Notes: generated by a model from the sequence alone, not told the origin. A stretch of 64,000 nucleotides of DNA from Tetramitus jugosus (GCA_937625935.1 OW569347.1:310001-374000), one strand, 5' to 3'. Shown: positions 9,001 to 45,060, numbered from the stretch's first letter. Made by a program: numbers and translations.

Positions 9001-12000
9001 CAGTATCCTATGAACAAAGTACGAGTCGAGAATGACAAGAAAATAGGCAACTTCGTTGCTGACTCTTGGGATCACACGAAGAAAATGTTGGCTGATGTTA
9101 ACTTTTTGAAGTCACTCATGAACTTTGAGAAAGATGAGATGAATGATGAAACCATTGAACTCCTTCAACCATATCTAAATATGGCCGTGTATAAGCCTGA
9201 AACATTGACTAGCGTTTCACCTGCCGCGGCATCTCTCTGTAAATGGGTGAGAGCTATGGCAATCTATCATGTAACTGCGAAGGATGTTAGACCAAAGATC
9301 GAAAAACTGAAAATCGCTGAGAGAAAACTTGAGGTTGCATCAGCCAAATTAAAGGCAAAGGAAGATGAACTAGCTGTTGTCCAGGAGGAATTGAACAAGA
9401 TTCAACAGAAGTTTGATGAGGCCCAACGTAGAAAACAAGAATTGCAAGAAGATGCTGAGAGAACAAGAAAATTCACTGTCCAAGCAAATAATCTGATTGC
9501 TGCTCTGTCTGGTGAGAGGGAGAGATGGACCCAACAATCAAACCAATTCAAAGATATGATTAATAGACTTACTGGAGACGTCGCTCTCGCTTGTGCTTTC
9601 ATATCCTACTGTGGTCCGTTCAATTCTGAATTTAGAAGCTTGCTTCTTGGGAAAACATTTTACTCTGATTGTGTGAAACGTAACATACCTGTTACTAAAG
9701 ATTTAAAGGTTATTAAGATGTTTACAGATGAAGCACAAATAGGAGAATGGGCACTCGAAGGTCTTCCATCGGACAACCACTCGATCGAGAATGCCATCAT
9801 GATCACAAGATCAACGAAATGGCCGTTGATTATCGATCCACAAGGACAAGGTCTAGCATGGCTGAAAAAGAGAGAATCAGAGAATGAACTTTTTATCACC
9901 CGCTTGAATGACAAGATGTTCAAACAAAAACTTGAGGATTGCATATCTTTTGGTCGCCCCTTGATTATTGAAAATGTTGATGAAGAATTAGATCCAATGC
10001 TAGATCCAGTGTTGGAGAAGAACTTTGTTATGAGCGGAAGGACTAAGCAATTAATTATTCAAGACAAAGCGGTTGACTACGATGATAATTTTAAATTATT
10101 TATAACTACTAAGCTCGCCAATCCTCACTTTAGCCCTGAGTTGTCAGCAAAGACAACAGTCATAGACTTCACTGTTACTATGGGCGGATTGGAGCAACAG
10201 CTACTTGGATATGTGATTCAAAAGGAGAAGGCAGAGCTTGAGGAAGAAAGAGAGAAACTGCTACAAGATGTGAATAACAACCAAAAGAAGATTAGAGATT
10301 ACGAAGATGCCCTCTTGAAAGAACTTTCTAATGCTCAGGGTAATCTCCTCCAGAACGAACCTCTGATTGAAACCCTTGCCAATACAAAGAAAGCAGCTGT
10401 AGAAGTCAAAGAAAAATTGAATGTAGCCATGGAAACAGAGAAGAGAATCAATGCTGCCAGAGAAGACTATCGGCCTGTGGCCATTCGTGGAAGTGTTTTA
10501 TATTTCTTAGTGGTGGAAATGAGTTTGGTGAACCCAATGTACCAAACATCCTTGAAACAATTTTTACACTTGTTTGATAAGGCGATTGGTAACTCTCCTC
10601 AAGCAGCTTTGGCTAAGCAGAGGATAGATAATATTATTGAAACATGTACTTTTTCAATCTATCGTTACATCAGCAGAGGTTTGTTCAAGAGACACAAATT
10701 CCTATTTGTTCTACTTCTAGCCTGTAAGATTTTGCTCCGTGCTGAAAAGTTGAGTTACGAGTCCTTCAGTTTATTGTTGAAAGGTGGATCAATGTTGGAT
10801 ATTAAGAGTGTGAGACCGAATATTTGCACTTGGTTACCAGACACTGCATGGCTAAATATTATTGCTTTAACGAGTTTGAAAACTTTTGAATCTCTTCCCG
10901 ATCTCATTCAAAAGAATGAGAAGTCATGGCAAGCACTTTATGATTCAGAAAAACCTGAAGACGCTAGAATAGTTAAGATCCCTGATATCAACGAAAAAGT
11001 CAATAAATTTGAGAGATTATTGTTGGTACGGGCACTCAGGGAAGACAGAACGGTTCTAGCTGCCATTGAATTCATTAAAGATACATTGGGAGAACATTAT
11101 GTGGAATCAGTAACAGTGGAACTAGAAGATACATGGAAAGAGAGTTCCAACTTGCAACCGTTGGTGTGTTTACTGAGTCCTGGTTCGGATCCGACAAGTA
11201 TGATTGAGAATCTGGCCAAATCTCAGAAGAGGGAAATTTACTCCATTTCAATGGGACAGGGACAAGAGAAGGGAGCCACAGAATTGATTGATAATGGATT
11301 TGCGAATGGAAGCTGGGTACTATTGCAAAATTGTCATCTCGGTCTCAACTTCATTTCAACGATAGAAGATAAATTGAAGATGGCAGATTACGTTCACCCC
11401 GATTTCAGGTTGTGGATAACCTCGGAGCCAAATCCTCGATTCCCAATCGGTCTCCTCCAAATGGGTATTAAAATAACGTTGGAAGGAGATGTTGGAATCA
11501 AAGCAGGTATGAAGAGTTCTTTCAGTTGGATTACCCAAGAACTATTGATGGCTTCTAAGAGACCTGAATGGGCACCCTTACTTTACAGCATGTGCTTCTT
11601 GAATAGTATTGTACAAGAGAGACGTAAGTTCGGTCCTCTTGGTTGGAATATTCCTTACGAATTTAACTATGCCGATTTAGATGCATCCCTATCATTCCTA
11701 CAAAACCACTTTGCTTCAATTGGAGATGATTTTAAGAAAGGACCGCCAATTAGTTGGCCAACTGTCCAATATATGATTTGTGAAGTACACTATGGTGGTA
11801 AAATCACTGATGATAGAGATAGAGATATGTTTGTCACATATGGCGAGTGTTGGTTACGACCAGAAGTAGCGGATCCCAAGTTCAAATTTGCGGAGGGATA
11901 CACAATTCCTCAATTAGAAGAGAAAGAAAAAACCAAGTATGAGGAGTACATAGATAAGTTGCCAGCAATTGATCATCCCGGAGTGTTTGGTCTTCATTCA

Positions 12001-12930
12001 AATGCTGATATAACATATCGTACAGAGGAATCAAAGGGCATTCTTGCAACCATTTTGGACATTCAACCAAAAGAGAGCTCTGGAACGGGTGGTGAAACAA
12101 GAGAAGACAAAGTAATGAAAATTGCTGACAATCTTCTTGCAAAAGTTCCTGCAGACTTTAACCCTGAGACTGTCGCATCAAGTATCAAGAAGCTTGGAGG
12201 AACATTCAAGAACTCTCTGAACGTATTCTTAAAACAAGAGATTGATCGCCTTCAGATCCTTGTCCGTCTTACAAGAAAAACATTGGCTGAACTGAAGTTG
12301 GCTATCGATGGAACCATTATTATGAGCCCAACCTTGCAAGATGCTCTGAACAATCTTCATGACGGTCGTGTTCCAAGTGCTTGGAGCAAATACTCTTGGT
12401 ATGCAGCAACCCTTGGACTTTGGTTTACTGAATTACTGATGAGATATGACCAGCTCCATAACTGGCTCACAGTTGAAAGACCAAAGAGCTTTTGGCTTGC
12501 TGGCTTCTATAATCCTCAAGGCTTTTTAACTGCCGTGCAGCAAGAGGTGACAAGAAACAAGCAAGGATGGGCCTTGGATGATGTCATACTGAAAACTGAG
12601 GTCACCAAGATGGACAAGACAGATATCACTTCGCCACCTGAGGAGGGCGTGTACATTCATGGAATGTATCTGGAGGGTGCTAGTTGGGACAAGAAAAATA
12701 GTCGTCTGGCGGAGTCACAACCAAAGATATTGTATACTGAACTTCCGGTGTTGCTCATCACAGCACAGACAGAGAAGAAGGCTGGAAAGAAGTTTTATCC
12801 ATGTCCCGTGTACCGAAACAAAACAAGAAACGACCTAACATATGTATTCACTGTGGATCTCAATTGTGCTGAAGATCGTTCGCATTGGAAAATGAGAGGT
12901 GTTGCTCTGTTGACCAACAAGGACAGTTGA
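1..12930 (+). CDS. Axonemal outer-arm dynein heavy chain, DNAH5/DNAH8 (gamma-type)-like; 5' end lies outside the window; intron 422-484
   Basis: Frame is open from base 1. A GT..AG intron (422-484) joins the 28..435 and 478..12930 ORFs in frame. P-loops are GPAGTGKT, GPAGAGKT, GGSGTAKT and GVGGSGKQ. Stalk coiled coil, WLAGFYNPQGFLT and PPVSGSIIWCRQL are typical of the DNAH5/8 class. Confidence 0.95.
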
Positions 12931-31319: not shown

Positions 31320-32669
31320 CTATATTTCTATTTCTTCTTCGTTCTTGCCAATTTCCAACTCACTTGTCGATGGAACTTGTTGTATTGCCGTTGATTTATC
31401 CTCACGATTCATACTTCCGCTGATATAGTTTTCCAGTTGGAGACGTTCGAGCAGGTGTGTTGTTTGGGGATTCAAGGTGTCGAGGGGGTTGTAAGAAACC
31501 GAGGAGGGATTAAAAGCTTCACTCCCTGTCGGATCGTACACTGGAGCACTGGCCACAAACTGGGAGTTTGGAATTTTCAAGGTTCCAAAATGTTGCGAAA
31601 CCCATTTTCTATGCTCCTGTAGTTCATTGTTATCAATTAGCTGATATGGATTTTGGAGGAAGGTTTGCGCAGATGGTTGACTAGATAGAGGATGGTGTGG
31701 TGTTATGAGATACTTGTTTGTGGCACGAATAATACTGAGCCATTCCAAATCATACTCAAAGCACGGTTCTTCAGAAGTATCATTGATATATGGATGATTT
31801 GGTTCTATATCAATGAATTGCAGGAAATCTCTGCGTGGCAAGCACTTGTCCAGTGCTAGAAATCGTGTCGTATTCGGTGTCTGTTGATTCTGCGTTGTTG
31901 ACCCATGAGGAACGACCGCTGGAAACTTACAGTGAAGATGACCAGAGAACCAATACCTGGGTTGAAGATTGTTCAGCAGAACATCAGAAGCAGGCGATCC
32001 CAGTTCACCTCGATCAATGTCTGACCTGAAGTGAGGCTTCCATCTCACCAATTGACCCACATTGCCATGCTTCGTTATACTCGCAGGCCAATCATGTGAC
32101 AACATGACATCAATCAATGGAGAGTGGGGAGATGCTGTCGCCGTACTCGCGGGAGCAGATTGACGCTTTTCAATCATGAGCTGATAAAGCTTAAAAATTT
32201 CAAAGGATCGAGTGTGATAGACACTGCGAATACCACGAGCATCATAGGGCACACGTTCCACATAGGCACTATGGAACGAATAGGGTTTATAGATACCAGA
32301 CACACCAGCAATACGCAATCCCTTGAAACGTATCACTCCCGAATGACCCAAGTAGTAAATGTTGGGTGCAACGAAGCCACCATAGTACAACTCCCACAGA
32401 TAGTTGCTCGCTTCATGATTTCCACCAATGAACAATGTAGGAACAGGTGCAGTGCACTCACCAGAGTAATACTTGTAAAAATCCTTGTAGGAGAGGTACT
32501 TTTGTGGCACGTTCATGCTCTTGAGATCAAAGTCATTGCGAACACTTTCAAAATCGCCACAACAGATCAATAAATCAATCTTTGTGTTGGTTTCACGCTG
32601 TGCATGCTCAATGGTGGCATAAATCTTGTCCAGATCACCATGACAACAACCCTCGACTGCAATTCGCAT
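31320..32669 (-). CDS. DBR1: RNA lariat debranching enzyme
   Basis: Motifs MRIAVEGCCHG, LLICCGDF, GGNHE, SHDWP, WFSGHLH and FLALDKCLP. The ATG is at 32669; the longer ORF-track start runs into the tRNA. Confidence 0.95.
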   Translation of the reverse strand: MRIAVEGCCHGDLDKIYATIEHAQRETNTKIDLLICCGDFESVRNDFDLKSMNVPQKYLSYKDFYKYYSGECTAPVPTLFIGGNHEASNYLWELYYGGFVAPNIYYLGHSGVIRFKGLRIAGVSGIYKPYSFHSAYVERVPYDARGIRSVYHTRSFEIFKLYQLMIEKRQSAPASTATASPHSPLIDVMLSHDWPASITKHGNVGQLVRWKPHFRSDIDRGELGSPASDVLLNNLQPRYWFSGHLHCKFPAVVPHGSTTQNQQTPNTTRFLALDKCLPRRDFLQFIDIEPNHPYINDTSEEPCFEYDLEWLSIIRATNKYLITPHHPLSSQPSAQTFLQNPYQLIDNNELQEHRKWVSQHFGTLKIPNSQFVASAPVYDPTGSEAFNPSSVSYNPLDTLNPQTTHLLERLQLENYISGSMNREDKSTAIQQVPSTSELEIGKNEEEIEI

Positions 32670-32707
32670 GATTCTTTGATTTGTTTGCAAAATACACCTG
32701 GCAACGC

Positions 32708-32712
32708 AAAAA
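32708..32712 (-). terminator. Pol III terminator (T5) of the tRNA gene
   Basis: TTTTT on the minus strand, 1 nt after the discriminator base. Confidence 0.7.
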
Positions 32713-32713
32713 G

Positions 32714-32786
32714 TACCGACGACGGGACTCGAACCCGCGACCACTGGATTAGAAGTCCAGTGCTCTTCCAGCTGAGCTACGACGGC
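32714..32786 (-). tRNA. tRNA-Arg(TCT), intronless, 73 nt, no encoded CCA
   Basis: Reads GCCGTCG TA GCTC AGCTGGAA GAGC A CTGGA CTTCTAA TCCAG TGGTC GCGGG TTCGAGT CCCGT CGTCGGT A. It folds as a cloverleaf with anticodon TCT and intact A and B boxes. Confidence 0.95.
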
Positions 32787-32808
32787 TATATATCTTCTTA
32801 CTATCTTT

Positions 32809-32833
32809 AGGTATTAGAGATTAACGGGCTTTA
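32809..32833 (+). repeat. Proximal target site: overlapping TSD sources AGGTATTAGAGATTA (32809-32823) and AGATTAACGGGCTTTA (32818-32833)
   Basis: The first sequence recurs at 37548-37562 and 42430-42444. The second recurs at 34535-34550 and 35946-35961. Every copy directly follows a poly(A) tail. Confidence 0.92.
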
Positions 32834-34535
32834 TTTACGTGAGACTGCCCGGAGAGCGAATCGAAGATCACGACATTGTTGTCGCCAACACGAGAGTCCC
32901 AGCAAAAGGACCCGAGGCGCATTTCCGTGCGTTAGGTCTTTTCCTCAACCTAAATGGTAAGACAGAACAGCAGGTAAGTCAGGCCATGACCAAAGCGAAG
33001 AGAGTCATTGAGCGACTCAAAATCATGAACCTGGGTGCGAGACAAGTCGCACGCATCGTAAATGCGTGCATCCACCCCATCTTCCTATATGCATGTGAGT
33101 TCACCAAGTGGACTAAGAAACAACTTGATGAGGTTTCGAGCATAGGAAAGCGACTTGTGAAGCACGAATCAGTCGCAATGAAGCGATACCCCAGTGAGTT
33201 ACTCTATGTAGGCCCAGAATGGGGTTCTATCGGTCTTGAGAACTTCTCTGAAGCAGTGACGATTCGCACTGCATTGTTTGTGAAGGCTATGATGAGAGGG
33301 AAGAGAGATGAGGATGCTAGGATTCTGTGGTACGACTCACTTGAGTATATCAAGCAACAATACACGTTCCAATTGGAGAACGTCTTCCAATCGGACCACA
33401 GAATCAACTGCGTCAAACACTCCTTTATGAAATGGTGTGCTGTTAAATTGCACAAGAGAGGAATTATCATCACTGACGACTCTCATAGTCGTTGCGAGGG
33501 GTGTAATTTGTCAAATTACCTAACAACACGACAATTGAGGTTACTGAGCAGAGCTGGACTCTATCAGAAGCAACAACTACTGCAAGATGGCGAAGTTAGA
33601 AGTTTCGAGGCACTAAAAACTGAGATTGGAAGAGGATTCGGCCTAAAGACTTATCAGGAGTTGATACTCACTGTCAAGGCAATGCCAGAATGTATGAGTA
33701 AGGATTTACATTCCTCAAAGGGGTTTATACAAATAATCCGATGTAATGGACAATACGCCAGAGGCCGAGATGACCTTAAAGAAATGCTCTTCAGGGAACG
33801 AAAGGCCACCATTGATCAATATCCAGAGTGGTGGTTGCAAACTGCCGCAATGGAGCACAAGAACCAATTCGAGTTTCTCAAGAACCCCTTTGTGATAGAT
33901 CGTCAATTGGAATGGTTCCATGCACAGATCAGAAGCGGCACATTACATACTAGATCAGTGTGTAATGATTTGTATGATGATGACAAACCGGATCAGTGTC
34001 CAAGGTGCGGCACTGAGTCCGAAACCATCATTCACTGTCTGATCAGGTGCAAGTGTGCAACCGATGCTCGTCGAAAACTTGTGTTGGAAGTTTTTAACAA
34101 ACTGCTCAGACTCCCATTGCATCGAGGATCGACTGTGAATCTTTGGTTTGACAAGGTGGTGTTCAGAAACGGGGTACTTTTCCCGAGATCCCGGAAGACC
34201 AGTCGGGAGTACCTCTCGGGAATGATGGGCATTGAGAGTGAAGCTCTTGACGAAGTTATCGATGCATTGGTGAAGAATGGAATGAAGTTAGAACTAGCCC
34301 ATCGCAAGGCACGAAGCTTTGTCAGTTGGGTAAAGAGTCGCTGCATCGTTACTTTGCACAAACTCTACCAGCAATCAAAAGACTACAAACAGCAGTAACG
34401 CTCTCCGAGCGTTACTGAAAGGAAAGATAAGTGCCGCTCTTCGAGCGGCACAGTGAGAATGAGAGAAACTATTTGAAAGAATGATACACAATAAAGTGAG
34501 CAACTACGTGTTGTATAAAAAAAAAAAAAAAAAAA
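32834..34535 (+). mobile_element. E1: 5'-truncated non-LTR retrotransposon, family B (C-terminal part of ORF2, 3' UTR, poly(A))
   Basis: Open ORF to 34398 with post-RT FRALG, the GSIGL motif and the CCHC finger CPRC-X8-H-X4-C. Poly(A) is at 34517-34535, and it is flanked by a 16-bp TSD. Confidence 0.9.
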
Positions 34536-34550
34536 GATTAACGGGCTTTA

Positions 34551-35946
34551 GAAAAAACGCCGATGAAAAAACGAACACACACCCCTGTTGTTCGTGAGTA
34601 TGAGAATCCACGCTATGCTGTGTGGACCACAGCACCAAGAGGAACTGCGCCAAGCAGCAAGGAGGTCATCATCACTGGAAAGTGCGATGACTCCCCCAAG
34701 GCTGCCTTGGCCAAGAAGATTGGCTTGGATTTTGGTGATTTGCTCACCAGGGTCCAAGTCATCAAGAAGGGCCCCAAGAGGTTTGTTGCGTGGGTGACTG
34801 TTGTTGATGACAACATTTACCCATTTGTTGAATCCTTCAACCGCAACAAGAAGATGAGTGGCTGCAAGGCAGCACTCAAGCACAATGTAGATTGTGCCAA
34901 GAAGGTCGTCCTCCACGGTGTCAAAGGTAAGACGGAGGACGACATCAAGGCCATGCTTGGCACAACAAAGGTCAAGCACGACACCGCCTTTGTTGTGATG
35001 GAGTCCGAAACGTATGCCGAAGCTTTTGCTTCGAAACGTTCAATCCATGCCAGTGGAGGTGGAAGCAAAGCGCTTCCTTCCACGCCCACGTGATCCGGTC
35101 AAGGCTGTCAGCAAGAGGCTGACCAAGATGTACCAAGAGCTCCTGGCTGTGGTGGACGACCTGCGCCACCAAGTCAGTGTGTTAAAAGATATGGCTTCCG
35201 TCAACCGGATTCCCCTCGCATCCCCGTCTCCAAGGACGCCGGAGCGAATCTCCGAATTCGAACTTTCGACTCCGTCTACGACCGATGACTGGGAGTCGAT
35301 CATGCCGGAGTCCCATCCCGCCACTCCAACTACGGTCACAAGAGCCAACCAACAACACCATTGATGAGGATGCTCGTAACAGAGCAATCCTCGAGCTAGT
35401 ATTGAACACCTCCGAGGTGTTCAAGAAAGTCAAGAAAGAGATTGCTGCCCGAGCAATCATGGTGGACCGTGCAAGAAGCACAACCACCAATGAAGATCCA
35501 GTTGAGTTGGATCTCAGTAACCCCGACTGTGAGTTACAGAGTCCCCAACTCAACGAACACAAGAAGCGATCAGCACGTGTCACCGTTGGTGACACTACTG
35601 CCAACAAGATCCCGGCCAGGTTGGCCAGTATCAAGTCAGGTGCTCTCCGTAGGTCCTACCAATTGGCTAGGACTACGGAGCCATCTGACCTCACCAGTGG
35701 TGCTCCAGATGGTAGTGGAGGCCCTCGCAACGAATCCCTGAAGAAGGGATCAAAACAACATTCCAAGAAGAGAATGAATCCTGTTGCGTAGGCCTGCCAC
35801 TCCACTGGGCAAGCACCACATCATGTTAGACAATTGAGAGCAGGCAAGCCTGCTCTCACTCAAAAGAATGTTGTTTTGATCCCTTCTTCAAAAAAAAAGT
35901 TCCGCAACGTGGTGCGTGAGCACCATTTGTTGTATTAAAAAAAAAA
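34551..35946 (+). mobile_element. E2: complete ~1.4 kb ORF1-only non-autonomous retroposon (half-LINE-like)
   Basis: Starts GAAAAAACG with ATG at 34563. ORF1 is homologous to E4 ORF1 and has a frameshift near 35025. There is no EN or RT. It ends GTTGTATT plus poly(A) and has its own 16-bp TSD (34535-34550 / 35946-35961). Confidence 0.85.
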
Positions 35947-35951
35947 GATTA

Positions 35952-37548
35952 ACGGGCTTTAGAGCACTTGGGCAGTTTACAAACCTCAATGGGGACACAG
36001 AGGCCCAGAAGAAACAAGCAAAGCAGAAGGTATCGAGAATCCTGAATCGGTTGAGGATGCTGAAACTGGGACCAAGTCAGGCAGCGAGGATAGTGAACAC
36101 CTGTATCCATCCTGTATTCTTGTTTGCTTCAGAGTTTACCCATTGGCCAAAGAAATGGCTAAACGAAATCGAGGGTATTGGACGCAAGGCAGTGAAACAT
36201 GGATCGAGTGCCATGAAAAGGTTTCCCTCTTTGCTGCTGTCAGTGGAGAGGGACAAAGGAGGTATTGGACTCAATGAATTCAAAGAGAGTTTGACGGCTA
36301 AGATCTCTGCCTTTGTCGTGGGGATGCTGCAAGGTAAGAGAGACACGGAAGCACGGACACTTCTGTTGGATACGCTTGATGATGTCAAGCAATCGCAAAC
36401 GCTCGTTCGGTCGAGCATATTTCAATCCAACAATCGTCTTCGTGAGACCAAACACTCTTACCTGTCTTGGTGCGCCAAACTTCTACATGGCTCGAAGGTT
36501 AAAGTAGGTCCCAAAGGAGATCATGAATGTGAGAAATGCAGTATTGGGTGGCATCTCCCTACGGGAGACGCAAAACTACTCATTCAAAGTGGAATTTCCA
36601 AAAACTCCCAACTCTTCGATGAGGATGGGATAATGGTTATCCCGTTTGAGGAAGCAAAGATGAAGTTCAAGTTGAAGGGCATTGGCCCAGCAAGGTACTC
36701 AAGGATAAGGGCTTACCTGGAAATTCTTGGTAAACCATGCGAAAAGAGATGGAGGGAGCGAACACTGAATGACACTCTGGAAGTGTCGGTGGGTGACAAA
36801 GCATTGAGCAACCCAAATGTCAGAGAAGGTCTCGTGGAACACTTCGTGCAGGTGAGGACAAAATCGATAGAATCAGAGTCTGAATGGAGATTGGAGGCTG
36901 AACTACAGAAAGAAAAAGAGTGGAATGAATTTCTAAAGTGTCCGTTCGGCCTGGAAAGAAGTGAATTGTGGTTTTACCATCAAGTTAGAAGTGGTACGCT
37001 CCACACAAAGACTGTGCTGCGTGACTTGTATGAGCCGTCGATGGAGGTCGTGTGTGCTCACTGTGCGAGTGCGCCGGAGACGATCAGCCACTTACTGGTG
37101 GAATGTGATGAAGCCAAAAGGGTAAGGAAAGGACTGGTGGAGGAATTTAAAGCCAAATTGGACAAGCTGGAGTTTATGAGACCAGTCAAGCTAAAGATAT
37201 GGTTCGATGATGTGGTTTACGATGACGGGAAATTGGTATCACTAAGCCCAAGTCGAACCACTGAAGAAATCCTAGCAGGGTTAATGGGAAAAGAGGATGA
37301 TCAGAAGGATGTATTGATGAAGGAGCTGGTTGTGTATGGTCGCAAGAAGAGGGAAACAAAGGTTAAAAGGCTGGTGAATGCAATGAAGAGGTCTTGCATC
37401 AAACGGTTATATAAAGTCTGGAGAGACTCAGTAGCGAAGAGAGGTGAACAATAGCTCAGAACCTGCGGTTCTGAGCGACAACACGTCTCACTGTAGTGCA
37501 TAGAATAAAGTGGCAACAAATGTTGTATGGAAAAAAAAAACAAAAAAA
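35952..37548 (+). mobile_element. E3: 5'-truncated non-LTR retrotransposon, family A
   Basis: Open ORF2 C-terminus to 37454 (GFRALG..GGIGL..CAHC-X8-H-X4-C), colinear with E4. Poly(A) at 37531-37548 is followed by the TSD AGGTATTAGAGATTA. Confidence 0.9.
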
Positions 37549-37577
37549 GGTATTAGAGATTAGAAAAACGAGAACAC

Positions 37578-38517
37578 ATGTCAACACAAGGACCGTCAGC
37601 ACAGGCGGTAATGATCCGCAGAAGTCAATATGTAGTATGGACAAAGGTGAGTAAAGAAGCAGCAATGAAGAGAAATGAAGCAGTTGTCACTGGTAAGTGC
37701 AACAATGTGACCCCAGAAGCGATAGTTAATAAGATAGTAGCTAGTTGTTCTGAGTGGGTAGAGAGGGTTCAAGTGATTAGAAGAGGAGAGAGTTACAAGG
37801 CGTGGATAATCATCAGAGGTGACAAAGTGTGGGAATTCATTCAGTGGTTTAACTGCACAAAAGCGTTGAAGGATTCCACGGCGGGGGTAAATGGTAGGAT
37901 GAGAGCCACACATGACGTCGTCATTACTGGAACTGGAAAGGTTAGCAAGGAGGACATTGAGACCTGGGCTGGTCGGGATAATGTACACAGAGTTGAATTG
38001 AGAGGAAACTCTGCCATTGTATCACCAAAGATCCTAGATGTGCGAATACACTTCTGGAAAAGACACCCATCAACAACACCAAGACAAGAAAATTCGTGCA
38101 CAAAACTCTTGGGCCTATGGAGATGCTGAAGAGGACTGTGACTCAACTACAGTCTGATATGAACAAAATGTTGGATGAATACAGAATTAGTGTGGAGCAA
38201 ATCCGAACTCTTAAGTCAGAATTAATGAAGATGTGTTAGTGGAGGAACCACATGAGACAATGCAAGCGATGGAGGAAACAGTAAACACCCCTGTGGCACA
38301 GATCAAAAACAGAGGAAAACAATCATTCGATAAGGGACAGAGGAGATTGGATGACTTTGTCAACAACAGAGGTAAGAAGCGAGATGCCAGAGAAGTGGAG
38401 GAAGATGAGATACAAAGAAAGATAATAATGAGAAATTCTCCTGGTGGAACAATTCAAGTGAGCAGCACTCAAGAGAGTGCGGTGTCACCCCAAGAGAATG
38501 ACCAAAGTGAGCAATGA
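37578..38517 (+). pseudogene. E4 ORF1 (RRM-like region plus coiled coil), frameshifts near 38020 and 38230
   Basis: YVVWT, EAVVTGKC, RVQVIRRG and VVITG..KEDI align with E2 ORF1. It continues in another frame as the coiled coil MLKRTVTQLQSDMNKML. Confidence 0.75.
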
Positions 38518-41500
38518 GCGCAACTCTCAAAGTTGTATGGTATAACATCAGAGGATTAGGAAGGAAACGGAATGATGTTGTTGCCATGATGGAGTCGGTC
38601 CCTAGGATCGATGTTTTGATGCTGCAAGAGGCAATTTGCAAGAACGAGAAGGTCAAGTTGGCATTCGAAAAGCAGTTGGAGTATGCTGGGTGTGCATTGA
38701 TACACACCAACGCAGTTGACAGGGTGATGACTATTATCAGAAGAGATAGTATACATGAGTACCGAACGCTGGTGACGAACAATAGATTTCTGGCAGTAGA
38801 GGTTGCAAAGGGAGATCTGCGAGTCACGCTGGTCAACCACTATGGACCTCACAAAAAAGAAGAGGGAGGGCACCACTATGTGAAGGTCAACGAGCAACTG
38901 AGGGAGCTCTCATGTAGGGGTAAATTGTTGTTTGGAGGGGATCACAATACAGTGCTTGCTAGCACTGAAAGAACTTCTGGAAGGCTAGACGTCAATAGTG
39001 CGCATTTCAAGGCTCTAGTGGAGGGCCTCCAATTGAGCAATGTGAACACGGTGACAGATAGGCCCCATTTCCACACTTTCTTCAGAGGCGAGTTTTCTTC
39101 ACGCATTGACACGGTCTGGTGCAATCCATCTGCAACTGAAATAGTTAGAGATGTGGAGAGGTACACGGCTAATGGAGTAGAGCGATCACATACCTACTAT
39201 GGTAGATGTCTGTTGGACAAAAACGGATGAACAAGAGCCTACAGAGGCGAAAACGAAGTTCCCAAAGAGGGATAACAAGATGTGGGTGGAGTACTCTAAG
39301 GAGGTGGTAGGAAAACTCGATAAGGCCAACCTCTCGGGACTGGAGACAGAGGAACAATGCAGCAAGATCACTATGATCTTAAAGGAGTGTGCGGAGATGT
39401 TCCCGAAAAGAAAACCAATTACCAAAGGGGTTGATAATCGTAGAGTTAGGCGCTGGTTGAAGGACAGAAAGGTGTTAGTGGAGAGACTCTCCTCTCAGGA
39501 TACTGGAGATCAGAAGCTAAGGAGTGTTTGCCAAGCCTACAATGAGGACAGTACTTTGATAGGTGTGATAAAGACACTGAAAGTGGTTGAGAGGTTGATA
39601 CAAGTGGAAAGAGCCCGCCGGGCCAACAAGAGATTCAACAAATGGCTGTACAAAGCCAGAACGTCTGAATTTGTTGACCCTCGCTTCTTCTTCAATGCCG
39701 CTACAGGCAAGAAGGCGATGAGACTAAGGTTCAAGTGCTACAAGAGTGGGGAAAAGGTGGTCACTGAACCGGAGAAAGTGGCGGAACATGCTGCTAACTA
39801 TTTTGAAGAGGTTTTCGAGCAGGACTTTGCGAACATGGCCTTCCTTGATGAGATGAGATGTAGAACTGAAAATATGGAAGACAAATTTCCTCCTTTCAAG
39901 GTTGAGGAGGTTCAACAATCCCTGAAGTGGCTGCGAAATAACAAAGCACCGGGAGTTGATGGAATTTTCAATGAAATGCTGAAGTTAAGACACACCAAAG
40001 AGAGAGACTACAGGTTTGAGCTCGCTGAAACATTAATGGTATTCTTCAACAAAATACTGGAGACGGGGCAATTCCCAAGTGAGTGGAAGAGATGCATTAT
40101 CGTTCCAGCATACAAGAAGGGCTGCCCTATGTTGATAGCGAACTTCCGACCTATTTGCCTGTTGAGCGGACTGTCAAAGGTGTTCACACGGTTGCTGAAT
40201 CAAAGAGTGTCAGCTGCTGCCGAGATAATGGGTGTCTTTAACAACACAAGGCGGAGGCCGCAAAATGCGAGACATAAGAGAGAAACTGTCGATCATCAGA
40301 GGAGTGATCGACCACGCGAATAGGAAGGATAAACAGCTATATCTTCTGCTCACGGATATCTCGAAGGCTTTTGATAGCGTACCACATAATGCCGTCACGG
40401 CTGCCTATCGGTTTTTCAACTTCCCAGAGCACATCATCATGCTGGTCAGGAACATGTTGGAGTCGAATGTGGCAACCATCGGAACACACGTGCCTCCAGA
40501 CCAATCGACATCAACAGGGGTACAAGGCAAGGTGATTCTTTGTCTCCGACGACCTATGTGATTGTTCATCAGTTAGTGCTGCTGTATGCAAAACTCAGAG
40601 CAAGCGGCTACCAAGCTATGAGCCAGAAAATCTGGAACGTGGCTTCCGTAGATGACTGTAACCTGTTCAGTGATAAGCTGGATGATTTACAGACGATGGC
40701 CAATGATATGTACAGAGCACTCAAGTGGATAGGACTTAGCATGCACCCGGATAAGCTGGAGTTCTTCGCTAGGAAAGAGGACAAGGATCCGGTGACGATC
40801 AGAGTAGCTAACAGAGTAATCACTGCAAAGAACAGACACGCCGGCTTCAGAGCTCTTGGCCTCTTCACAAACCTCAATGGAGACACAGAGGCTCAGAAGA
40901 AACAAGCAAAGCAGAAAGTAATGAGAATATTGAATCGGCTGAGGATGCTGAGATTGGGACCTAGTCAAGCAGCTAGAATTGTGAACACTTGTGTGCATCC
41001 TGTATTTCTGTTCGCCTCGGAGTTCACCCACTGGCCTAAGAAGTGGATGAACGAGATAGAAGGTATTGGTCGCAAGGTAGTGAAACATGGATCAAATGCC
41101 ATGAAGAGATTCCCCTCAATGTTGCTATCAGTAGAGAGGGACAAAGGAGGAATAGGGCTCAATGATTTCAGAGTGAGTCTTACGTCCAAGATATCAGCGT
41201 TCATCGCGGGGATGCTGCATGGAAAAAGAGACACTGAAGCACGAACACTTCTGTTGGATACGCTTGATGACGTCAAGCACACACAAACGCTCATTCGGTC
41301 GAGCATTTTCCAATCCAACAATCGTCTTCGTGAGGCCAGGCATTCATACTTGGTATGGTGCGCCAAACTCCTCCACAGTGCGGAGGTAATCGTGAGCCAA
41401 AAGAGTGGTCACGAATGCGAGAAGTGCAGCATCGGTTGGCATCTCCCCTCAGGAGATGCCAAACTGCTCTTGAAGAGTGGAATCACGAAAACTCGCAACT

Positions 41501-42344
41501 TTTCGATGAGGATGGAATAATGGTCATTAAACTGGAGGAGGCCAAGAAGAAGTTCAAGCTGAAAGGAGTCGGTCCTGCAAGGTACTCTAGGATAAAGGCC
41601 TACATGGAGCTCCTTGGAAAACCATGTGACGAAAGTTGGAGGAAGCAGAGAGCAATGAAAGATGCCGTAGAAGTGACGGCAGATGGCAGTGTTCTCAGCA
41701 ATCCCAATGTAAGAGAAGGTTTGATGGAACATTTCGCGCAAGTAAGAGCTGAGTCTATAAAATCAGATGGAAACTGGAAGTTAGAAGCTGAACTGCAGAA
41801 GGATAAGGAGTGGAATGAGTTCTTGAAGTGCCCTTTCGGTCTAGAAAGAGGTGAGTTGTGGTTTTATCACCAAGTCCGGAGTGGCACTCTGCACACAAAG
41901 ACTGTAGTACGAGACCTGTATAAACCACTGATGAAGACCATGTGTGCTCATTGCAAGAGCGAACCGGAAACGATACTACACCTCTTGGTGGAGTGTGAAG
42001 AAACCAAAAGAGCAAGAAGCGAACTAGTGGAAGAATTCAAGGTTTCATTGAACAAACTGGAGTTCATGAGACCAGCCAAGCTCAATCTCTGGTTTGACAA
42101 TGCGGTGTATGATGATAGCAAAATGCGACCTCGTATCCCCAGTCGAACATCGGAAGAGCTGCTGGCAGGACTAATGGGTAAAGAAGAGGACCAGAAGGAG
42201 GTACTGATGAAGGAAATAGTAGTATATGGCCGCAAAAAGCGGGAAACAAAAGTGAAAAGATTGGTAAATGCAATGAAAAGATCTTGCATCAAACGAATGT
42301 ACAAAGTCTGGAAAGACTCGCTAGCGAAGAGACCTGCACAATAG
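38514..42344 (+). pseudogene. E4 ORF2: apurinic-type endonuclease, reverse transcriptase and CCHC zinc finger; frameshifts near 39180, 40245, 40500 and 41490
   Basis: APE motifs are WYNIRGL, LMLQE, NHYGP, GGDHN, SRID and SDH. RT motifs are KAPGVDG, NFRPICLL, DISKAFDSV, GTRQGDSLSP and SVDD. The zinc finger is CAHCKSEPETILHLLVEC. Confidence 0.92.
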
Positions 42345-42456
42345 CTCAGAACCTGCGGTTCTGAGCGACGACATGTCTCATAGTAGTGTATTGAATAAAG
42401 TGGCAACAACTGTTGTATGGAAAAAAAAAAGGTATTAGAGATTAGCGCAGGAGTGA

Positions 42457-42965
42457 TGGATGGTGAGCCTATGTGCTTCAAAGAGTTCAAGCAAGTGTAT
42501 CCCAACTGTACGCTGGGTGCACAGAGGCACCAGTTGTCTAGCACAGTGGGTAAGGAACTAATTAGCATGGGAGTGTCAGCTGACAGTTGTATCGACATAT
42601 GGTTCGATAATGTCAGAACGGAAAGATTGAAAAAAGAGCACTGCGGTGGACTAGCAGAGAGTATCTAACAGGTATGATGGGCATCGAAACGAGTGTCATC
42701 GAAGATATCACCAATGGATTGGTAGCCAGTGGAGTCAGAGTAGCAGTGGCCGTAAAAAAGCAAGAATTTATGTGAATGGGGTGAAACGGAGATGTCTCAC
42801 GACTCTCCTTCACCTCTTCACCACAACAAAAGCGAAACAACAATGACGCTCTGCGAGCGTCATTGAGAATTAATCAGGTGACCAAGGGTCATCGCTCTTC
42901 GAGCGATGGCCGAAGAAAACAAAAGACAATAAAGCGAGCAACCGAAATGGTTGTATAAAAACAAA
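42457..42965 (+). mobile_element. E5: short 5'-truncated, internally deleted family-B-related copy
   Basis: SREYLTGMMGIE matches E1 SREYLSGMMGIE. It has the same two 3' hairpins, ends GTTGTAT plus an A-tail, and has the TSD ATTAGCGCAGGAGTGA (42441-42456 / 42965-42980). Confidence 0.85.
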
Positions 42966-42978
42966 TTAGCGCAGGAGT

Positions 42979-44094
42979 GAAAAAACGCAGATGAAAAACG
43001 AACACACACCCCTGTTGTTCGTGAGTATGAGAATCCACGCTATGCTGTGTGGACCACAGCACCAAGAGGAACTGCGCCAAGCAGCAAGGAGGTCATCATC
43101 ACTGGAAAGTGTGATGACTCTCCCAAGGCTGCCTTGGCCAAGAAGATTGGCTTGGATTTTGGTGATTTGCTCACCAGGGTCCAAGTCATCAAGAAGGGCC
43201 CCAAGAGGTTTGTTGCGTGGGTAACTGTTGTTGATGACAACATTTACCCATTTGTTGAATCCTTCAACCGCAACAAGAAGATGAGTGGCTGCAAGGCAGC
43301 ACTCAAGCACAACGTAGATTGTGCCAAGAAGGTCGTCCTCCACGGTGTCAAAGGTAAGACGGAGGACGACATCAAGGCCATGCTTGGCACAACAAAGGTC
43401 AAGAACGTGCTCAAGAAGCACGACACCGCCTTTGTTGTGATGGAAACCGAAACGTATGCCGAAGCTTTGCTTCGGAACGTTCAATCCATACCAGTGGAGG
43501 TGGAAGCAAAGCGCTTCCTTCCACGCCCACGTGATCCAGTCAAGGCTGTCAGCAAGAGGCTGACCAAGATGATCATGCCGGAGTCCCATCCCGCCACTCC
43601 AACTACGGTCACAAGAGCCAACCAACAACACCATTGATGAGGATGCTCGTAACAGAGCAATCCTCGAGCTAGTATTGAACACCTCCGAGGTGTTCAAGAA
43701 AGTCAAGAAAGAGATTGCTGCCCGAGCAATCATGGTGGACCGTGCAAGAAGCACAGCCACCGAAGAAGATCCAGTTGAGTTGGATCTCAGTAACCCCGAC
43801 TGCGAGTTACAGAGTCCCCAACTCAACGAACACAAGAAGCGATGTTGGAGTTGGTGACACTGCTGCCAACAAGATCCCGGCCAGGTTGGCCAGTATCAAG
43901 TCAGATGCTCTCCGTAGGTCCTACCAACTGGCTAGGACTACGGAGCCATCTGACCTCACCAGTGGTGCTCCAGATGGTAGTGGAGGCCCTCGCAATCCCT
44001 GAAGAAGGGATCAAAACAACATTCCAAGAAGAGAATGAATCCTGTTGCGTAGGCCTTCCACTCCACTGAGCAAGCACCACAACATGTTAGACAA
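42979..44094 (+). mobile_element. E6: older copy of the ORF1-only element, 3' end lost
   Basis: Near-identical to E2 34551-35833 apart from indels, including a 168-bp deletion equivalent to 35131-35298. Starts GAAAAAACG. Confidence 0.88.
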
Positions 44095-45060
44095 AGCAGT
44101 GCTCAGTGGAGTGAACAAGGTAAAGGCCACGGTCACTCGGTACGTCGAGAGACCACATGATCCTCTCAAGGCTGTCAACAAGAGGTTGACAAAGATGTAC
44201 GAGGAGCTGCTGACGGTGGTTGACGGACTGCGTCGACAGGTCACAGAACTCACCAAGGAATTGGGAAAGACAAAGGGTCAAGTGGGCAACAAACCGGTTC
44301 CAATACCGGAACAAGAAGTTGCCCAAAGCCCTGCTACTGAGCTAGTGGAGCCACAAGAACACTTTGGAAAGGCGGTAAGCTGATAGTGCAGCCAAACCGA
44401 AAGTAGAGCAAAGAACTCCTCCTAGGTATGGCGGGTGTAGAGAAGGAAGTGAGTTGGATCAAATAATGAGAGGGATGAGGAAGATACCAAGTTGTAGTGG
44501 CCAAAAGAAAGGGCATATGGTGTGCAGTGCGGATGCATCACAACGTTCTAATAAATCTGGGGGAATGCAGGATGCACAATGTTCTCCTAAACCACTCGCT
44601 CGCACTATGATAATTGCTGATTGGCTAGATGTGTACCCAGTGCCATTCTCAAGAAGCTCCACAAGGTAGTTGTCACGAACCGCGGGTCGATCCTGACGAC
44701 AACTTTTTGTGTCTGAAGGAATTCGATCATATCTTCACCACTTGTCTTTCCTCTCGGTACATCCACCACTCATGGAATACTAAAATTTTCCGTACCTTGC
44801 TCCGATCTTGCATGTCTACAGTTTTTGGTTGACCAAGAAAGAAGTGCAAGGGTAGATGAGGACGAGTTGCTTTGGCCACAGCGGACAGCGAGTGTCAGTG
44901 GAGCAGATTTTAGCTTTCTCAAATACCCACTTGCTTCACTGTCTGCTCCGCTGTCCAAGGGCTAACACGAGTAAAAGGCAATTGGCAATGAAAGTGGGAC
45001 ACGAGCTCATGAAGATAGGAGTCCCAGACTCCATGCTATATCGATACTTGGTTTGGTGAG
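44095..45060 (+). mobile_element. E7: heavily deleted remnant(s) of a family-B-related element with ORF1 and ORF2 fragments
   Basis: RPHDPLKAVNKRLTKMYEELL matches E2 RPRDPVKAVSKRLTKMYQELL. FLCLKEF, FSFLKYP and LLHCLLRC..KRQLAMKVGHELMKIGV match E1/E5 ORF2. No poly(A) or TSD remains. Confidence 0.7.

What the first reader, a model, noticed from the sequence alone, without database searches (positions are those of the whole stretch)
32714..45060. tRNA-anchored, polar, chronologically ordered stack of seven non-LTR retroelements
Seen in the sequence: upstream of tRNA-Arg(TCT) are seven co-oriented elements with 5' ends facing the tRNA. E1-E5 each end in GTTGTAT plus an A-tail, followed by a copy of the 14-16 bp that lay 23-49 bp upstream of the tRNA when that element inserted. 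Removing elements by their TSDs gives a consistent order, E7, E6, E5, E4, E3, E2, E1, each inserting next to the tRNA and pushing older ones away. Established: Dictyostelium TRE5-A, an APE-type non-LTR element, inserts about 50 bp upstream of tRNA genes in this orientation and its ORF1 contacts TFIIIB. Inference: this is a tRNA-targeting system in a gene-dense flagellate, possibly of independent origin, where several families share one landing pad and leave an insertion record with leader-proximal polarity. I do not recognise these families.
Basis: partly seen in the sequence, partly recalled or inferred. Interest (0 to 1): 0.95.

Follow-up and report, generated by a model that had tools for sequence, protein, structure and literature searches.

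The report
tRNA-targeted LINE insertion stack
Just upstream of one tRNA gene, at least nine retrotransposon copies have piled up one after another at the same spot, which shows that this free-living flagellate carries LINE-type elements that home to tRNA genes much as the TRE5 elements of Dictyostelium do.

Summary
Upstream of tRNA-Arg(TCT) (32713-32786, minus strand) lies a 12.2-kb run of co-oriented non-LTR retroelement copies. E1-E5 end in GTTGTAT plus an A-tail and have exact 14-16 bp target-site duplications (TSDs). Removing them one by one places every TSD 24-49 bp from the tRNA. E6 has no TSD. "E7" is at least three decayed fragments.

The targeting is genome-wide:
- All 24 GTTGTAT+A ends in 354 kb of sampled DNA face a tRNA gene on the opposite strand.
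- 20 of 37 sampled tRNA genes are occupied.
- 18 of 47 copies of the 1.4-kb ORF1-only family (E2/E6) sit 41-58 bp from a tRNA (one at about 29 bp); the control pattern gave none.
- A related species shows the same geometry.

The elements have an APE endonuclease, a reverse transcriptase (RT) and a CCHC finger. Their ORF1 has two RRM domains and a coiled coil. Several families share a 3' end. The RT is at most 33% identical to anything outside the lineage.

The system behaves like Dictyostelium TRE5-A, including the ORF1-only partner. Whether it is related to TRE5 or arose independently could not be tested. Tethering to the Pol III complex is inferred. First-stage notes on other windows of this genome report the same thing.

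Verdict: a new variant of a known kind, of moderate to high interest.

The parts
32713..32786 (-). tRNA-Arg(TCT), the target gene. A T5 terminator follows it, and the DBR1 start codon lies 43 nt beyond its 3' end.
   Evidence: ARAGORN; Rfam RF00005, 68.8 bits; sequence
32787..32833 (.). The present 47-bp landing pad between the tRNA and E1. It holds the proximal copies of the TSDs of E3 (32810-32823) and E1 (32818-32833); bases 32824-32833 derive from the 5' end of E3.
32834..34535 (+). E1, the youngest insertion. It is a 5'-truncated LINE (family B) with an intact 519-aa ORF2 C-terminal part including the CCHC finger, two 3' hairpins, AATAAA, GTTGTAT and an A19 tail. Distal TSD at 34535-34550.
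   Evidence: Contigs in three runs continue 5' of 32834 with RT-coding sequence, so other copies are longer.
34552..35946 (+). E2, a full-length 1.39-kb ORF1-only element (family D). Its 5' UTR is about 11 nt. ORF1 in this copy is broken by two frameshifts. The 3' end is GTTGTATT plus A10. Distal TSD at 35947-35962.
   Evidence: at least 28 near-full-length copies at 90-96% identity; other copies lack 1 nt at 35024 and carry +CC at 35338
35952..37548 (+). E3, a 5'-truncated LINE 78% identical to the E4 3' part (a sister subfamily of family A). It has an intact 512-aa ORF with a weak zf-RVT match. Distal TSD at 37549-37562.
37564..42430 (+). E4, a full-length 4.87-kb LINE (family A). Layout: ORF1 (37578-38517, broken); an ATGA stop/start overlap at 38514; ORF2 with APE (38514-39227), RT (about 39900-41000) and CCHC (about 41940-42000). 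ORF2 lies in at least five frame pieces. Distal TSD at 42431-42445.
   Evidence: Pfam Exo_endo_phos, RVT_1 and zf-RVT on the separate pieces; copies 98% identical elsewhere
42457..42964 (+). E5, a 508-bp 3' fragment of a third LINE family (family C, like L016/L022/L025). It has two CGCTCTNCGAGCG hairpins, GTTGTAT and a short degenerate A-tail. Distal TSD at 42965-42980.
42981..44090 (+). E6, an older copy of the ORF1-only family D (95-99% identical to E2 in blocks). The 5' end is intact at d=49-50. It has internal deletions; the 3' end and TSD are lost.
44091..44361 (+). E7a, an internal ORF1 fragment of a second ORF1-only family (F2, as in L026/L016/L002).
   Evidence: blastn at 89-94% to L002, L016, L022 and L026
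44365..44490 (+). E7b, a fragment of the ORF2 C-terminus of the L004-type LINE family, with stop codons.
   Evidence: blastx at 85% to L004 RT aa 765-803; blastn to L004
44594..45023 (+). E7c, a strongly decayed ORF2 fragment (aa about 537-750). It is the piece furthest from the tRNA.
   Evidence: blastx at 30-35% identity to the L004 and L016 ORF2; outer limit of element similarity

Best explanation
This is a pile of successive insertions by one lineage of APE-type non-LTR retrotransposons (LINEs). [quoted passage not shown]

Shown:
- Each event gives a poly(A)-ended copy with an 11-20 bp TSD. The proximal edge of the TSD (the first-strand nick that primes reverse transcription) lies 23-43 bp from the first tRNA nucleotide. 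Its distal edge (the second-strand nick, where the element's 5' end joins) lies 37-58 bp from it.
- The distance is measured from the tRNA, so each new copy lands between the tRNA and the previous copy and pushes older copies outward. The result is an ordered record: E1 is the youngest, then E2, E3, E4, E5, E6 and finally the E7 fragments.
- Autonomous families (APE-RT-CCHC ORF2, plus an ORF1 with two RRMs and a coiled coil) and two 1.3-1.4-kb ORF1-only families share the site and a common 3' end: a hairpin after the stop codon, AATAAA, then GCAAC(C)-loop-(G)GTTGTAT plus A-tail.

Inferred:
- The ribonucleoprotein is tethered to the Pol III pre-initiation complex (TFIIIB/TFIIIC) on the tRNA gene, probably through ORF1p, as shown for Dictyostelium TRE5-A.
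- The shared 3' stem-loop is what the reverse transcriptase recognises. That would let the ORF1-only elements borrow ORF2p in trans.
For: Stack anatomy and scripted removal.

Domains:
- E4 pieces match Exo_endo_phos, RVT_1 and zf-RVT.
- An intact 843-aa RT-CCHC segment of a full-length 5.27-kb element upstream of tRNA-Lys matches RVT_1 at E=1.3e-27, and its APE piece matches at 6.4e-6.

Seen from the tRNA side:
- 19 TSD-bounded GTTGTAT+A insertions at 12 tRNA genes (Arg, Lys, Leu, Ile, Ala) have proximal TSD copies at 24-56 bp.
- All 24 3'-end signatures in 354 kb, at 14 tRNA genes, have their 5' side toward a tRNA on the opposite strand.
- Element-coding similarity upstream of tRNAs is 37.1 kb sense against 1.8 kb antisense, and 20 of 37 tRNA genes are occupied.
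- Within the 64-kb window, such similarity is confined to 32833-45023.

Seen from the element side:
- 18 of 47 genomic sites of an E2-family 5' motif lie 115-145 nt from a reverse-complement B box, against 0 for the control pattern and about 0.02 expected. This gives flanks of 41-58 bp, with one of about 29 bp.
- Six more sites sit in verified stacks.
- On contigs C1-C7, 6 of 9 element loci have a B box at the expected offset.

Sequence independence: the TSDs differ at every tRNA, and E1 and E2 inserted into the 5' end of E3.

Second species (GCA_037189345.1):
- An E2-like element starts 55 bp upstream of tRNA-Val with a 16-bp TSD.
- Behind it lies a truncated LINE ending in GCAACC..GGTTGTATT plus an A-tail, with nearly the same TSD.

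Other support:
- ORF1 fold: AlphaFold2 gives two beta-alpha-beta-beta-alpha-beta units and a long helix (pLDDT mostly 70-90). Foldseek hits tandem-RRM proteins and NONO/SFPQ at E about 1e-5.
- 3' architecture across families: (D13).
- TRE5-A properties for comparison: PMC3159450, PMC5911963, PMC5006619.
Against: - No experiment or read evidence shows tethering to TFIIIB/TFIIIC.
- Two of nine element loci on C1-C7 have no strict B box at the expected place. The strict pattern detects 35 of 37 tRNAs.
- One decayed ORF1 fragment (L015 2178-2459) lies downstream of a tRNA in the same orientation.
- E6 and E7 lack TSDs, so their order is positional.
- Nucleotide divergence does not track the order cleanly. 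The first 591 nt of E6 are 98% identical to the L001 copy, whereas E2 is 96% identical to it.
- The public reads available were short assembled contigs and could not span any junction.
Confidence: 0.88

Rival explanations
1. The same system, but homologous to the dictyostelid TRE5 lineage through ancient common descent or horizontal transfer, rather than an independent invention of tRNA targeting.
For: There are many parallels with TRE5-A:
- the integration distance (40-54 bp for TRE5);
- the 5'-to-5' orientation;
- an APE-RT-zinc-finger ORF2;
- an ORF1 of similar size (about 47-50 kDa against 51 kDa);
- an oligo(A) tail;
- an abundant ORF1-only, non-autonomous partner like TRE5-A.2.

The CCHC spacing Cx2Cx8Hx4C is the spacing I recall for L1-clade elements, the clade in which the review table lists TRE5. 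The Atlas top cluster is Tx1-like.
Against: - An ORF1 single-sequence search and a profile search of 5.8 billion proteins found only 8 and 15 clusters, all close relatives. The four whose source was looked up or that were searched here (P0182-P0184, P0186) came from one related assembly or from environmental contigs. None carried a Dictyostelium name.
- The RT is at most 33% identical to anything outside the lineage in 1.84 billion representatives.
- The 5' UTR is 11-35 nt, with no sign of the A/B/C modules of TRE5-A.
- Spaller et al. found no TRE-like elements in other Amoebozoa, so a direct vertical link to a flagellate would require massive loss.
Confidence: 0.2
2. Targeting works through a sequence motif in the tRNA 5' flank, recognised by the endonuclease, rather than through a protein tether to the Pol III complex.
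For: Many tRNA 5' flanks in this genome begin with an A/T-rich ATAT-type motif next to the gene. APE-type endonucleases of L1-like elements do have weak sequence preferences.
Against: - The TSDs and nick sites share no consensus across 19 insertions.
- E1 and E2 nicked inside sequence donated by E3, and E3 and E4 used the identical site.
- The nick positions vary over about 20 bp, as expected of a ruler rather than a recognition site.
Confidence: 0.07
3. There is no active targeting. Insertion is random or driven by A-tails, and copies survive only in the harmless space next to tRNA genes. Alternatively, elements spread by duplication together with tRNA genes.
For: The genome is very gene-dense, so selection against insertions elsewhere must be strong.
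Against: - Selection cannot produce a fixed orientation (24 of 24) and a 20-bp positional window.
- The TSDs map to the tRNA flank, not to the A-tails of earlier copies.
- Different tRNA species with unrelated flanks and different TSDs carry the elements, so they did not spread by co-duplication.
Confidence: 0.03
4. The stack is an assembly artefact: repeats wrongly chained together.
For: The region is built of repeats that have 90-98% identical copies elsewhere. No public read set available here spans a junction.
Against: - Every junction carries a locus-specific TSD that matches its partner exactly.
- The E1/E2 TSD includes the unique truncation point of E3. A false join of repeats would not produce this.
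- Equivalent stacks occur at other tRNA genes and in another species' assembly.
- An 88-nt contig of organism A runs without a mismatch from the tRNA into E1, but with only 18 nt in E1 (table 8).
Confidence: 0.02

Closest known systems
TRE5-A (formerly DRE) of Dictyostelium discoideum, with its non-autonomous derivative TRE5-A.2
   Same: - It is an APE-type non-LTR element with ORF1 and an APE-RT-zinc-finger ORF2 and an oligo(A) tail.
[quoted passage not shown]
- An ORF2-deleted, ORF1-retaining derivative is mobilised in trans, and the 3'-terminal sequence is essential.
- A large share of tRNA genes is occupied: 61% carry a TRE of some kind in D. discoideum (PMC5006619), and 20 of 37 are occupied here.
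   Different: - The host is a flagellated, non-dictyostelid protist.
- No sequence-level link was found for ORF1, and the RT is only remotely similar to anything known.
- The 5' UTR is 11-35 nt instead of A/B modules, and there is no C-module. The 3' end here is a hairpin, AATAAA and a GCAAC..GTTGTAT stem.
- ORF1 and ORF2 are joined by an ATGA overlap in E4, whereas a -1 frameshift is reported for TRE5-A.
- At least four autonomous families and two ORF1-only families coexist. The ORF1-only lineage predates the split from a related species.
- TFIIIB binding by ORF1 is untested here.
NLTR-B of Polysphondylium pallidum (Spaller et al. 2016)
   Same: It is a non-LTR element unrelated to the TREs that is found 39-64 bp upstream of tRNA genes. 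It is a precedent for convergent evolution of the TRE5-like position.
   Different: [quoted passage not shown] The elements here have a CCHC finger and no RNase H match.
HAL1 ('half-L1') elements of mammals
   Same: They are LINE derivatives that keep a functional ORF1 but lack ORF2, and persist as lineages of their own (from my own knowledge, not checked here).
   Different: HAL1 is not site-specific. The ORF1 here has the order RRM-RRM-coiled coil, not coiled coil-RRM-CTD.
Ty3 and Ty1 of budding yeast, DGLT-A of Dictyostelium
   Same: They target Pol III-transcribed genes through the transcription complex, as a safe haven in a compact genome (PMC5911963).
   Different: They are LTR elements that use integrase, at different distances (the TSS for Ty3, up to about 1 kb for Ty1), without a fixed polar stacking.
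Tx1-group sequence-specific LINEs
   Same: They have an APE-RT-CCHC architecture. A Tx1-like cluster was the top Atlas match. They are associated with multicopy small-RNA genes.
   Different: Those elements recognise a specific target sequence, often inside the repeat or gene. Here the target is a position relative to the tRNA gene, whatever the sequence.

Membership tests
TRE5-type tRNA-gene-targeted non-LTR retrotransposon (defined by behaviour) | Integration in a narrow window about 40-54 bp upstream of the tRNA mature coding sequence | tested here: met
   The 5' junctions lie at 37-58 bp for 19 TSD-bounded insertions and 17 of 18 directly adjacent E2-family copies (one flank of about 29 bp).
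TRE5-type tRNA-gene-targeted non-LTR retrotransposon (defined by behaviour) | Fixed orientation, with the element's 5' end facing the tRNA's 5' end | tested here: met
   All 24 3'-end signatures, at 14 tRNA genes, follow this rule. Coding similarity is 37.1 kb sense against 1.8 kb antisense.
TRE5-type tRNA-gene-targeted non-LTR retrotransposon (defined by behaviour) | Poly(A)/oligo(A) 3' end, TSDs and frequent 5' truncation, the marks of target-primed reverse transcription | tested here: met
   the 5' truncation of E1 is confirmed by longer copies in reads
TRE5-type tRNA-gene-targeted non-LTR retrotransposon (defined by behaviour) | Target choice depends on the Pol III transcription complex (B box/TFIIIC; ORF1p binds TFIIIB) | not testable with these tools
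   Only indirect support is available: the position does not depend on local sequence, and tRNAs of many isotypes are hit.
TRE5-type tRNA-gene-targeted non-LTR retrotransposon (defined by behaviour) | A non-autonomous ORF1-only derivative mobilised in trans | tested here: inconclusive
   The structure is present. There are two ORF1-only families with intact 388-414-aa ORF1 and the shared 3' end; the E2 family has 47 or more copies. Mobilisation in trans is inferred, not shown.
TRE clade of Dictyostelia (membership by descent) | RT/ORF2 groups with TRE5/TRE3 in a phylogeny | not tested
   No named TRE sequence could be obtained with the tools. The hits carry no usable names.
TRE clade of Dictyostelia (membership by descent) | Modular UTRs (A and B modules at the 5' end, B and C modules at the 3' end) | tested here: not met
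   Full-length copies start with A5-8CG and reach the ORF1 ATG after 11-35 nt. The 3' UTR is 100-160 nt with a hairpin, AATAAA and a terminal stem.
L1/Tx1 group of APE-type LINEs | N-terminal APE endonuclease, central RT and a C-terminal CCHC motif | tested here: met
   Pfam Exo_endo_phos, RVT_1 and weak zf-RVT matches; Cx2Cx8Hx4C read in L004:2753-5281
L1/Tx1 group of APE-type LINEs | Phylogenetic placement of the RT within the clade | tested here: inconclusive
   PDB matches are about equal for R2 (2.8e-18) and human L1 ORF2p (3.7e-15). The Atlas top cluster is 'Transposon TX1' at 0.97. No tree with named references was possible.
L1/Tx1 group of APE-type LINEs | ORF1p with a coiled coil and an RRM | tested here: inconclusive
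   Both modules are predicted, but in the order RRM-RRM-coiled coil, and no Pfam ORF1 family matches.

The most novel reading that the evidence does not exclude
A second, independently evolved lineage of LINEs that reads the position of the Pol III complex on tRNA genes, found outside Amoebozoa. Three features would set it apart:
- A tandem-RRM ORF1p may act as the tether.
- ORF1-only elements persist as their own long-lived lineages across species.
- Full-length copies have almost no 5' UTR, so they may depend on the tRNA-proximal landing pad or on a minimal terminal initiator for transcription.
Probability: 0.4. Interest if true: 0.78.

Novelty: new variant of a known kind. Interest (0 to 1): 0.62.

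Why it matters
Position-specific integration of non-LTR elements at tRNA genes has been described only in dictyostelid amoebae (2018 review table, PMC5911963). The origin of that behaviour is stated to be unknown (PMC5006619).

A well-populated system in an unrelated, compact-genome flagellate offers several things:
- It has several active-looking families, ORF1-only partners and an occupancy near half of the tRNA genes. That makes it an independent replicate for asking how a LINE ribonucleoprotein measures distance from a Pol III complex.
- It allows a test of whether ORF1p is generally the tether.
- It bears on why compact genomes repeatedly evolve this solution.
- Tethered, sequence-independent integration at safe sites is also of interest as a design principle for gene insertion.
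- The ordered stacks give a built-in relative chronology of family activity.

Tried and rejected
**Fetching genome DNA.** The flanks of all E4 and E2 copies could therefore not be read. I used pattern counts instead.

**Complete tRNA map.** The RF00005 search scores only 63 candidates, and the B-box listing shows only the first 100 places.

**Reads.**
- All four runs were short assembled contigs; the longest piece on the stretch was 584 nt. No junction could be bridged and no empty allele was seen.
- This neither supports nor questions the assembly.

**Organism identity.**
- Run names are coded.
- The look-up of a host protein found nothing.
- The Atlas search on a myotubularin was uninformative.
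- The related assembly GCA_037189345.1 is not mentioned in the paper library.

**Named RT references for a tree.**
- Protein hits carry almost no names.
- The nearest outside hits come from a large multicellular genome, GCA_030710605.1.
- The PDB search does not separate L1 from R2.
- No RT tree was built.

**Broken reading frames.** E4 and E2 were searched piece by piece.

**Complex prediction.** It was not used, because the host TFIIIB sequences could not be fetched.

**Divergence as a clock.** It does not order E2 and E6 cleanly.

**Literature.** Searches for tRNA-targeted LINEs outside dictyostelids, including Naegleria and Andalucia, found nothing. That library is incomplete.

Full report
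**1. What is there**

ARAGORN and Rfam find a single tRNA in the 64-kb window, tRNA-Arg(TCT), at 32713-32786 on the minus strand. Its upstream side is therefore the higher coordinates.

- From 32834 to 45023 the plus strand is one continuous run of retroelement sequence. It is the only such sequence in the window.
- Five units end in GTTGTAT, 0-2 extra bases and an A-tail, at 34510, 35929, 37522, 42412 and 42950.
- Each unit is followed by an exact 14-16 bp repeat of sequence lying nearer the tRNA.
- I removed E1, E2, E3, E4 and E5 in turn, each with one TSD copy. At every step exactly two copies of the next TSD remained. The proximal copy fell at 32-47, 33-48, 24-37, 24-37 and 34-49 bp from the tRNA 5' end.
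- The E1/E2 TSD contains 11 nt of the truncated 5' end of E3. E3 and E4 used the same site to the base. The order E5, E4, E3, E2, E1 (oldest to youngest) is thus forced by the sequence itself.
- After removal the flank runs straight into the intact 5' end of E6 at d=49-50.
- E6 has lost its 3' end.
For these pieces the order is only positional, although decay does increase with distance from the tRNA.

**2. What the units are**

- E4 (4.87 kb) is a full-length LINE. ORF1 is followed, through an ATGA overlap, by an ORF2 whose separate frame pieces match Exo_endo_phos, RVT_1 and zf-RVT.
- E1 and E3 are 5'-truncated copies with intact 519- and 512-aa ORF2 C-terminal parts. In three runs, contigs that match E1 from 32834 onward are preceded by further RT-coding sequence. 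This confirms that E1 is a truncated copy.
- E2 and E6 belong to a 1.39-kb family that has only ORF1. At least 28 near-full-length copies are 90-96% identical, and 47 sites carry its 5' motif.
- An intact E2-family copy (L001) encodes a 414-aa ORF1. A second ORF1-only family, F2, encodes 382-388 aa.
- A full-length 5.27-kb element upstream of a tRNA-Lys (L004) supplied an intact 843-aa RT-CCHC segment. It matches RVT_1 at E=1.3e-27 and has YVDD and Cx2Cx8Hx4C motifs.
- The ORF2 parts of the different families are 38-52% identical to each other. The ORF1 N-termini align across all families. So the families form one radiation rather than unrelated lineages.

**3. Is tRNA targeting general?**

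I fetched the upstream regions of 29 further tRNA-bearing loci, chosen from the tRNA list without regard to elements.

Seen from the tRNA side:
- 19 TSD-bounded GTTGTAT+A insertions at 12 tRNA genes (Arg, Lys, Leu, Ile, Ala) have proximal TSD copies at 24-56 bp. TSDs are 11-20 bp long and share no consensus.
- All 24 3'-end signatures in 354 kb have their 5' side toward a tRNA on the opposite strand.
- Protein-level similarity is 37.1 kb sense against 1.8 kb antisense. 20 of 37 tRNA genes are occupied.

Seen from the element side:
- Of the 47 genomic sites of an E2-family 5' motif, 18 lie 115-145 nt from a reverse-complement B box. The control pattern gave 0, and about 0.02 would be expected by chance. 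This corresponds to flanks of 41-58 bp, with one of about 29 bp.
- Six more sites lie in stacks that I could read or infer from coordinates. The remaining 23 could not be checked.
- B-box counts, 656 against 226 for the control, suggest roughly 430-450 tRNA genes.

In a related species:
- The assembly GCA_037189345.1 has ORF1 63% and RT 64% identical to those here.
- An E2-like element starts 55 bp upstream of tRNA-Val with a 16-bp TSD.
- Behind it sits a truncated LINE ending in GCAACC..GGTTGTATT plus an A-tail, with nearly the same TSD.
- A further contig has an ORF1 fragment about 80 bp upstream of a weak tRNA match on the opposite strand.

First-stage notes on other windows of this genome describe the same geometry. 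I treated these as leads only.

**4. How it most likely works**

Shown:
- Integration is by target-primed reverse transcription: A-tails, TSDs and 5' truncation are all present.
- Small inverted ORF1 pieces inside some stacks look like twin priming.
- The first-strand nick lies 23-43 bp from the tRNA start. The second nick lies 11-20 bp further out.
- The site is set by distance from the tRNA, not by sequence. New copies nick host flank or the 5' end of an older element alike.
- This ruler explains the polarity: the newest copy is always next to the tRNA.

Inferred:
- The ruler is the Pol III pre-initiation complex. This rests on analogy with TRE5-A, whose ORF1p binds TBP, Brf1 and Bdp1 and whose targeting needs the B box (PMC5911963).
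- The ORF1p here is predicted to have two RRM folds (residues about 34-105 and 114-175) and a long helix (183-218), with pLDDT mostly 70-90. Foldseek matches tandem-RRM proteins and NONO/SFPQ. The C-terminal half is low-confidence but has conserved blocks.
- All families share a 3' plan:
  - one or two strong hairpins just after the stop codon, many with a CGCTCTNCGAGCG core;
  - an AATAAA signal;
  - a terminal GCAAC(C)-loop-(G)GTTG stem within GTTGTAT.
- This plan is the likely handle for the reverse transcriptase. It is the likely reason why ORF1-only elements can be copied in trans, as TRE5-A.2 is (PMC3159450).
- The terminal stem is conserved in sequence, so covariation cannot prove it.

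Full-length copies begin with A5-8CG and reach the ORF1 ATG after only 11-35 nt. The promoter must therefore be a minimal terminal or internal one, or be lent by the tRNA-proximal flank. This remains open.

**5. Comparison with what is known**

- The behaviour matches TRE5-A feature by feature, including the ORF1-only partner.
- NLTR-B of P. pallidum shows that the same position has evolved more than once (PMC5006619).
- The 2018 review lists tRNA-targeting non-LTR elements only from dictyostelids. My searches found no later report for other protists, but the library is incomplete.
- The host here has an axonemal dynein heavy chain and is very gene-dense. Its DNA occurs in soil, groundwater and rhizosphere metagenomes. 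Earlier notes call it heterolobosean-like, which I did not verify.
- At sequence level the RT is at most 33% identical to anything outside the lineage among 1.84 billion representatives.
- ORF1 has only close relatives, found by both single-sequence and profile searches.
- The clade is unresolved between L1/Tx1-like and others.
- Membership in the TRE clade was not testable. The TRE5-A UTR modules are absent.

**6. Limits**

- The public reads were short contigs and say nothing on the assembly across the stack. The matching locus-specific TSDs argue for the assembly.
- One decayed ORF1 fragment lies in a non-canonical place.

**7. Verdict**

The system is a genome-wide, TRE5-like, tRNA-targeted LINE system in a non-dictyostelid flagellate. 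It is a new variant of a known kind, and its evolutionary independence from TRE5 is still open.

Noticed in passing
window 32667-32786: The tRNA-Arg gene sits directly in front of the lariat-debranching enzyme gene (DBR1) on the same strand. A T5 terminator follows the tRNA, and the DBR1 ATG at 32669 is only 43 nt from the tRNA 3' end. The tRNA therefore occupies the DBR1 promoter region, and the 12-kb stack lies just beyond it.
   Followed up: partly
window 478-12930: A single uninterrupted 4150-codon ORF encodes an axonemal-type dynein heavy chain (DHC_N1, DHC_N2, AAA_6, DYH2-5-8_CC). This shows a flagellate with very few introns.
   Followed up: partly
L017 5078-5244; L022 4517-4776; L026 5551-5703: Short ORF1 or APE fragments lie in inverted orientation inside otherwise co-oriented stacks. 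They are reminiscent of the 5' inversions that twin priming produces in L1.
   Followed up: no
L015 2178-2459: A decayed ORF1 fragment (about 45% aa identity) lies 266 bp downstream of a tRNA-Ile in the same orientation. It is the one piece seen that does not fit the upstream, opposite-strand rule.
   Followed up: partly
L006 6636-8064: tRNA-Gln and tRNA-Ile lie head to head, 1.28 kb apart, with one element between them. Its 5' end is 83 bp from tRNA-Gln. This shows how a shared upstream space is assigned to one of two tRNAs.
   Followed up: no
L031 2348-2624 (GCA_037189345.1): In the related species a 5S rRNA gene lies 80 bp from the targeted tRNA-Val. Whether 5S genes are also targets, as they are for TRE5-A, was not examined.
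   Followed up: no
G000 contigs C54 and C56: Two contigs carry tRNA genes at identical coordinates (941, 12773, 14364, 14438, 44585). This is probably an organelle genome present twice in the assembly.
   Followed up: no
window 34552-35946 (E2 family) in public data: An ORF1 protein 98% identical to the E2-family ORF1 stands for 23 sequences from environmental assemblies, on contigs of about 1.6 kb. In all four runs laid, depth over E2 is 10-30 times that over its neighbours. The family is abundant in wild populations too.
   Followed up: partly
L008 3284-3298; L003 2407-2419; L027 2160-2174: GTTGTAT+A ends lie only 186-396 bp upstream of tRNA genes, with little or no coding similarity. They are probably very short 5'-truncated insertions.
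   Followed up: no
L017 2549-2645: A 97-nt tRNA (Rfam 55.9 bits; ARAGORN could not name the anticodon; probably intron-containing) has an E4-like full-length element starting 53 bp upstream. The distance is therefore kept relative to the tRNA 5' end even when the B box is displaced.
   Followed up: partly
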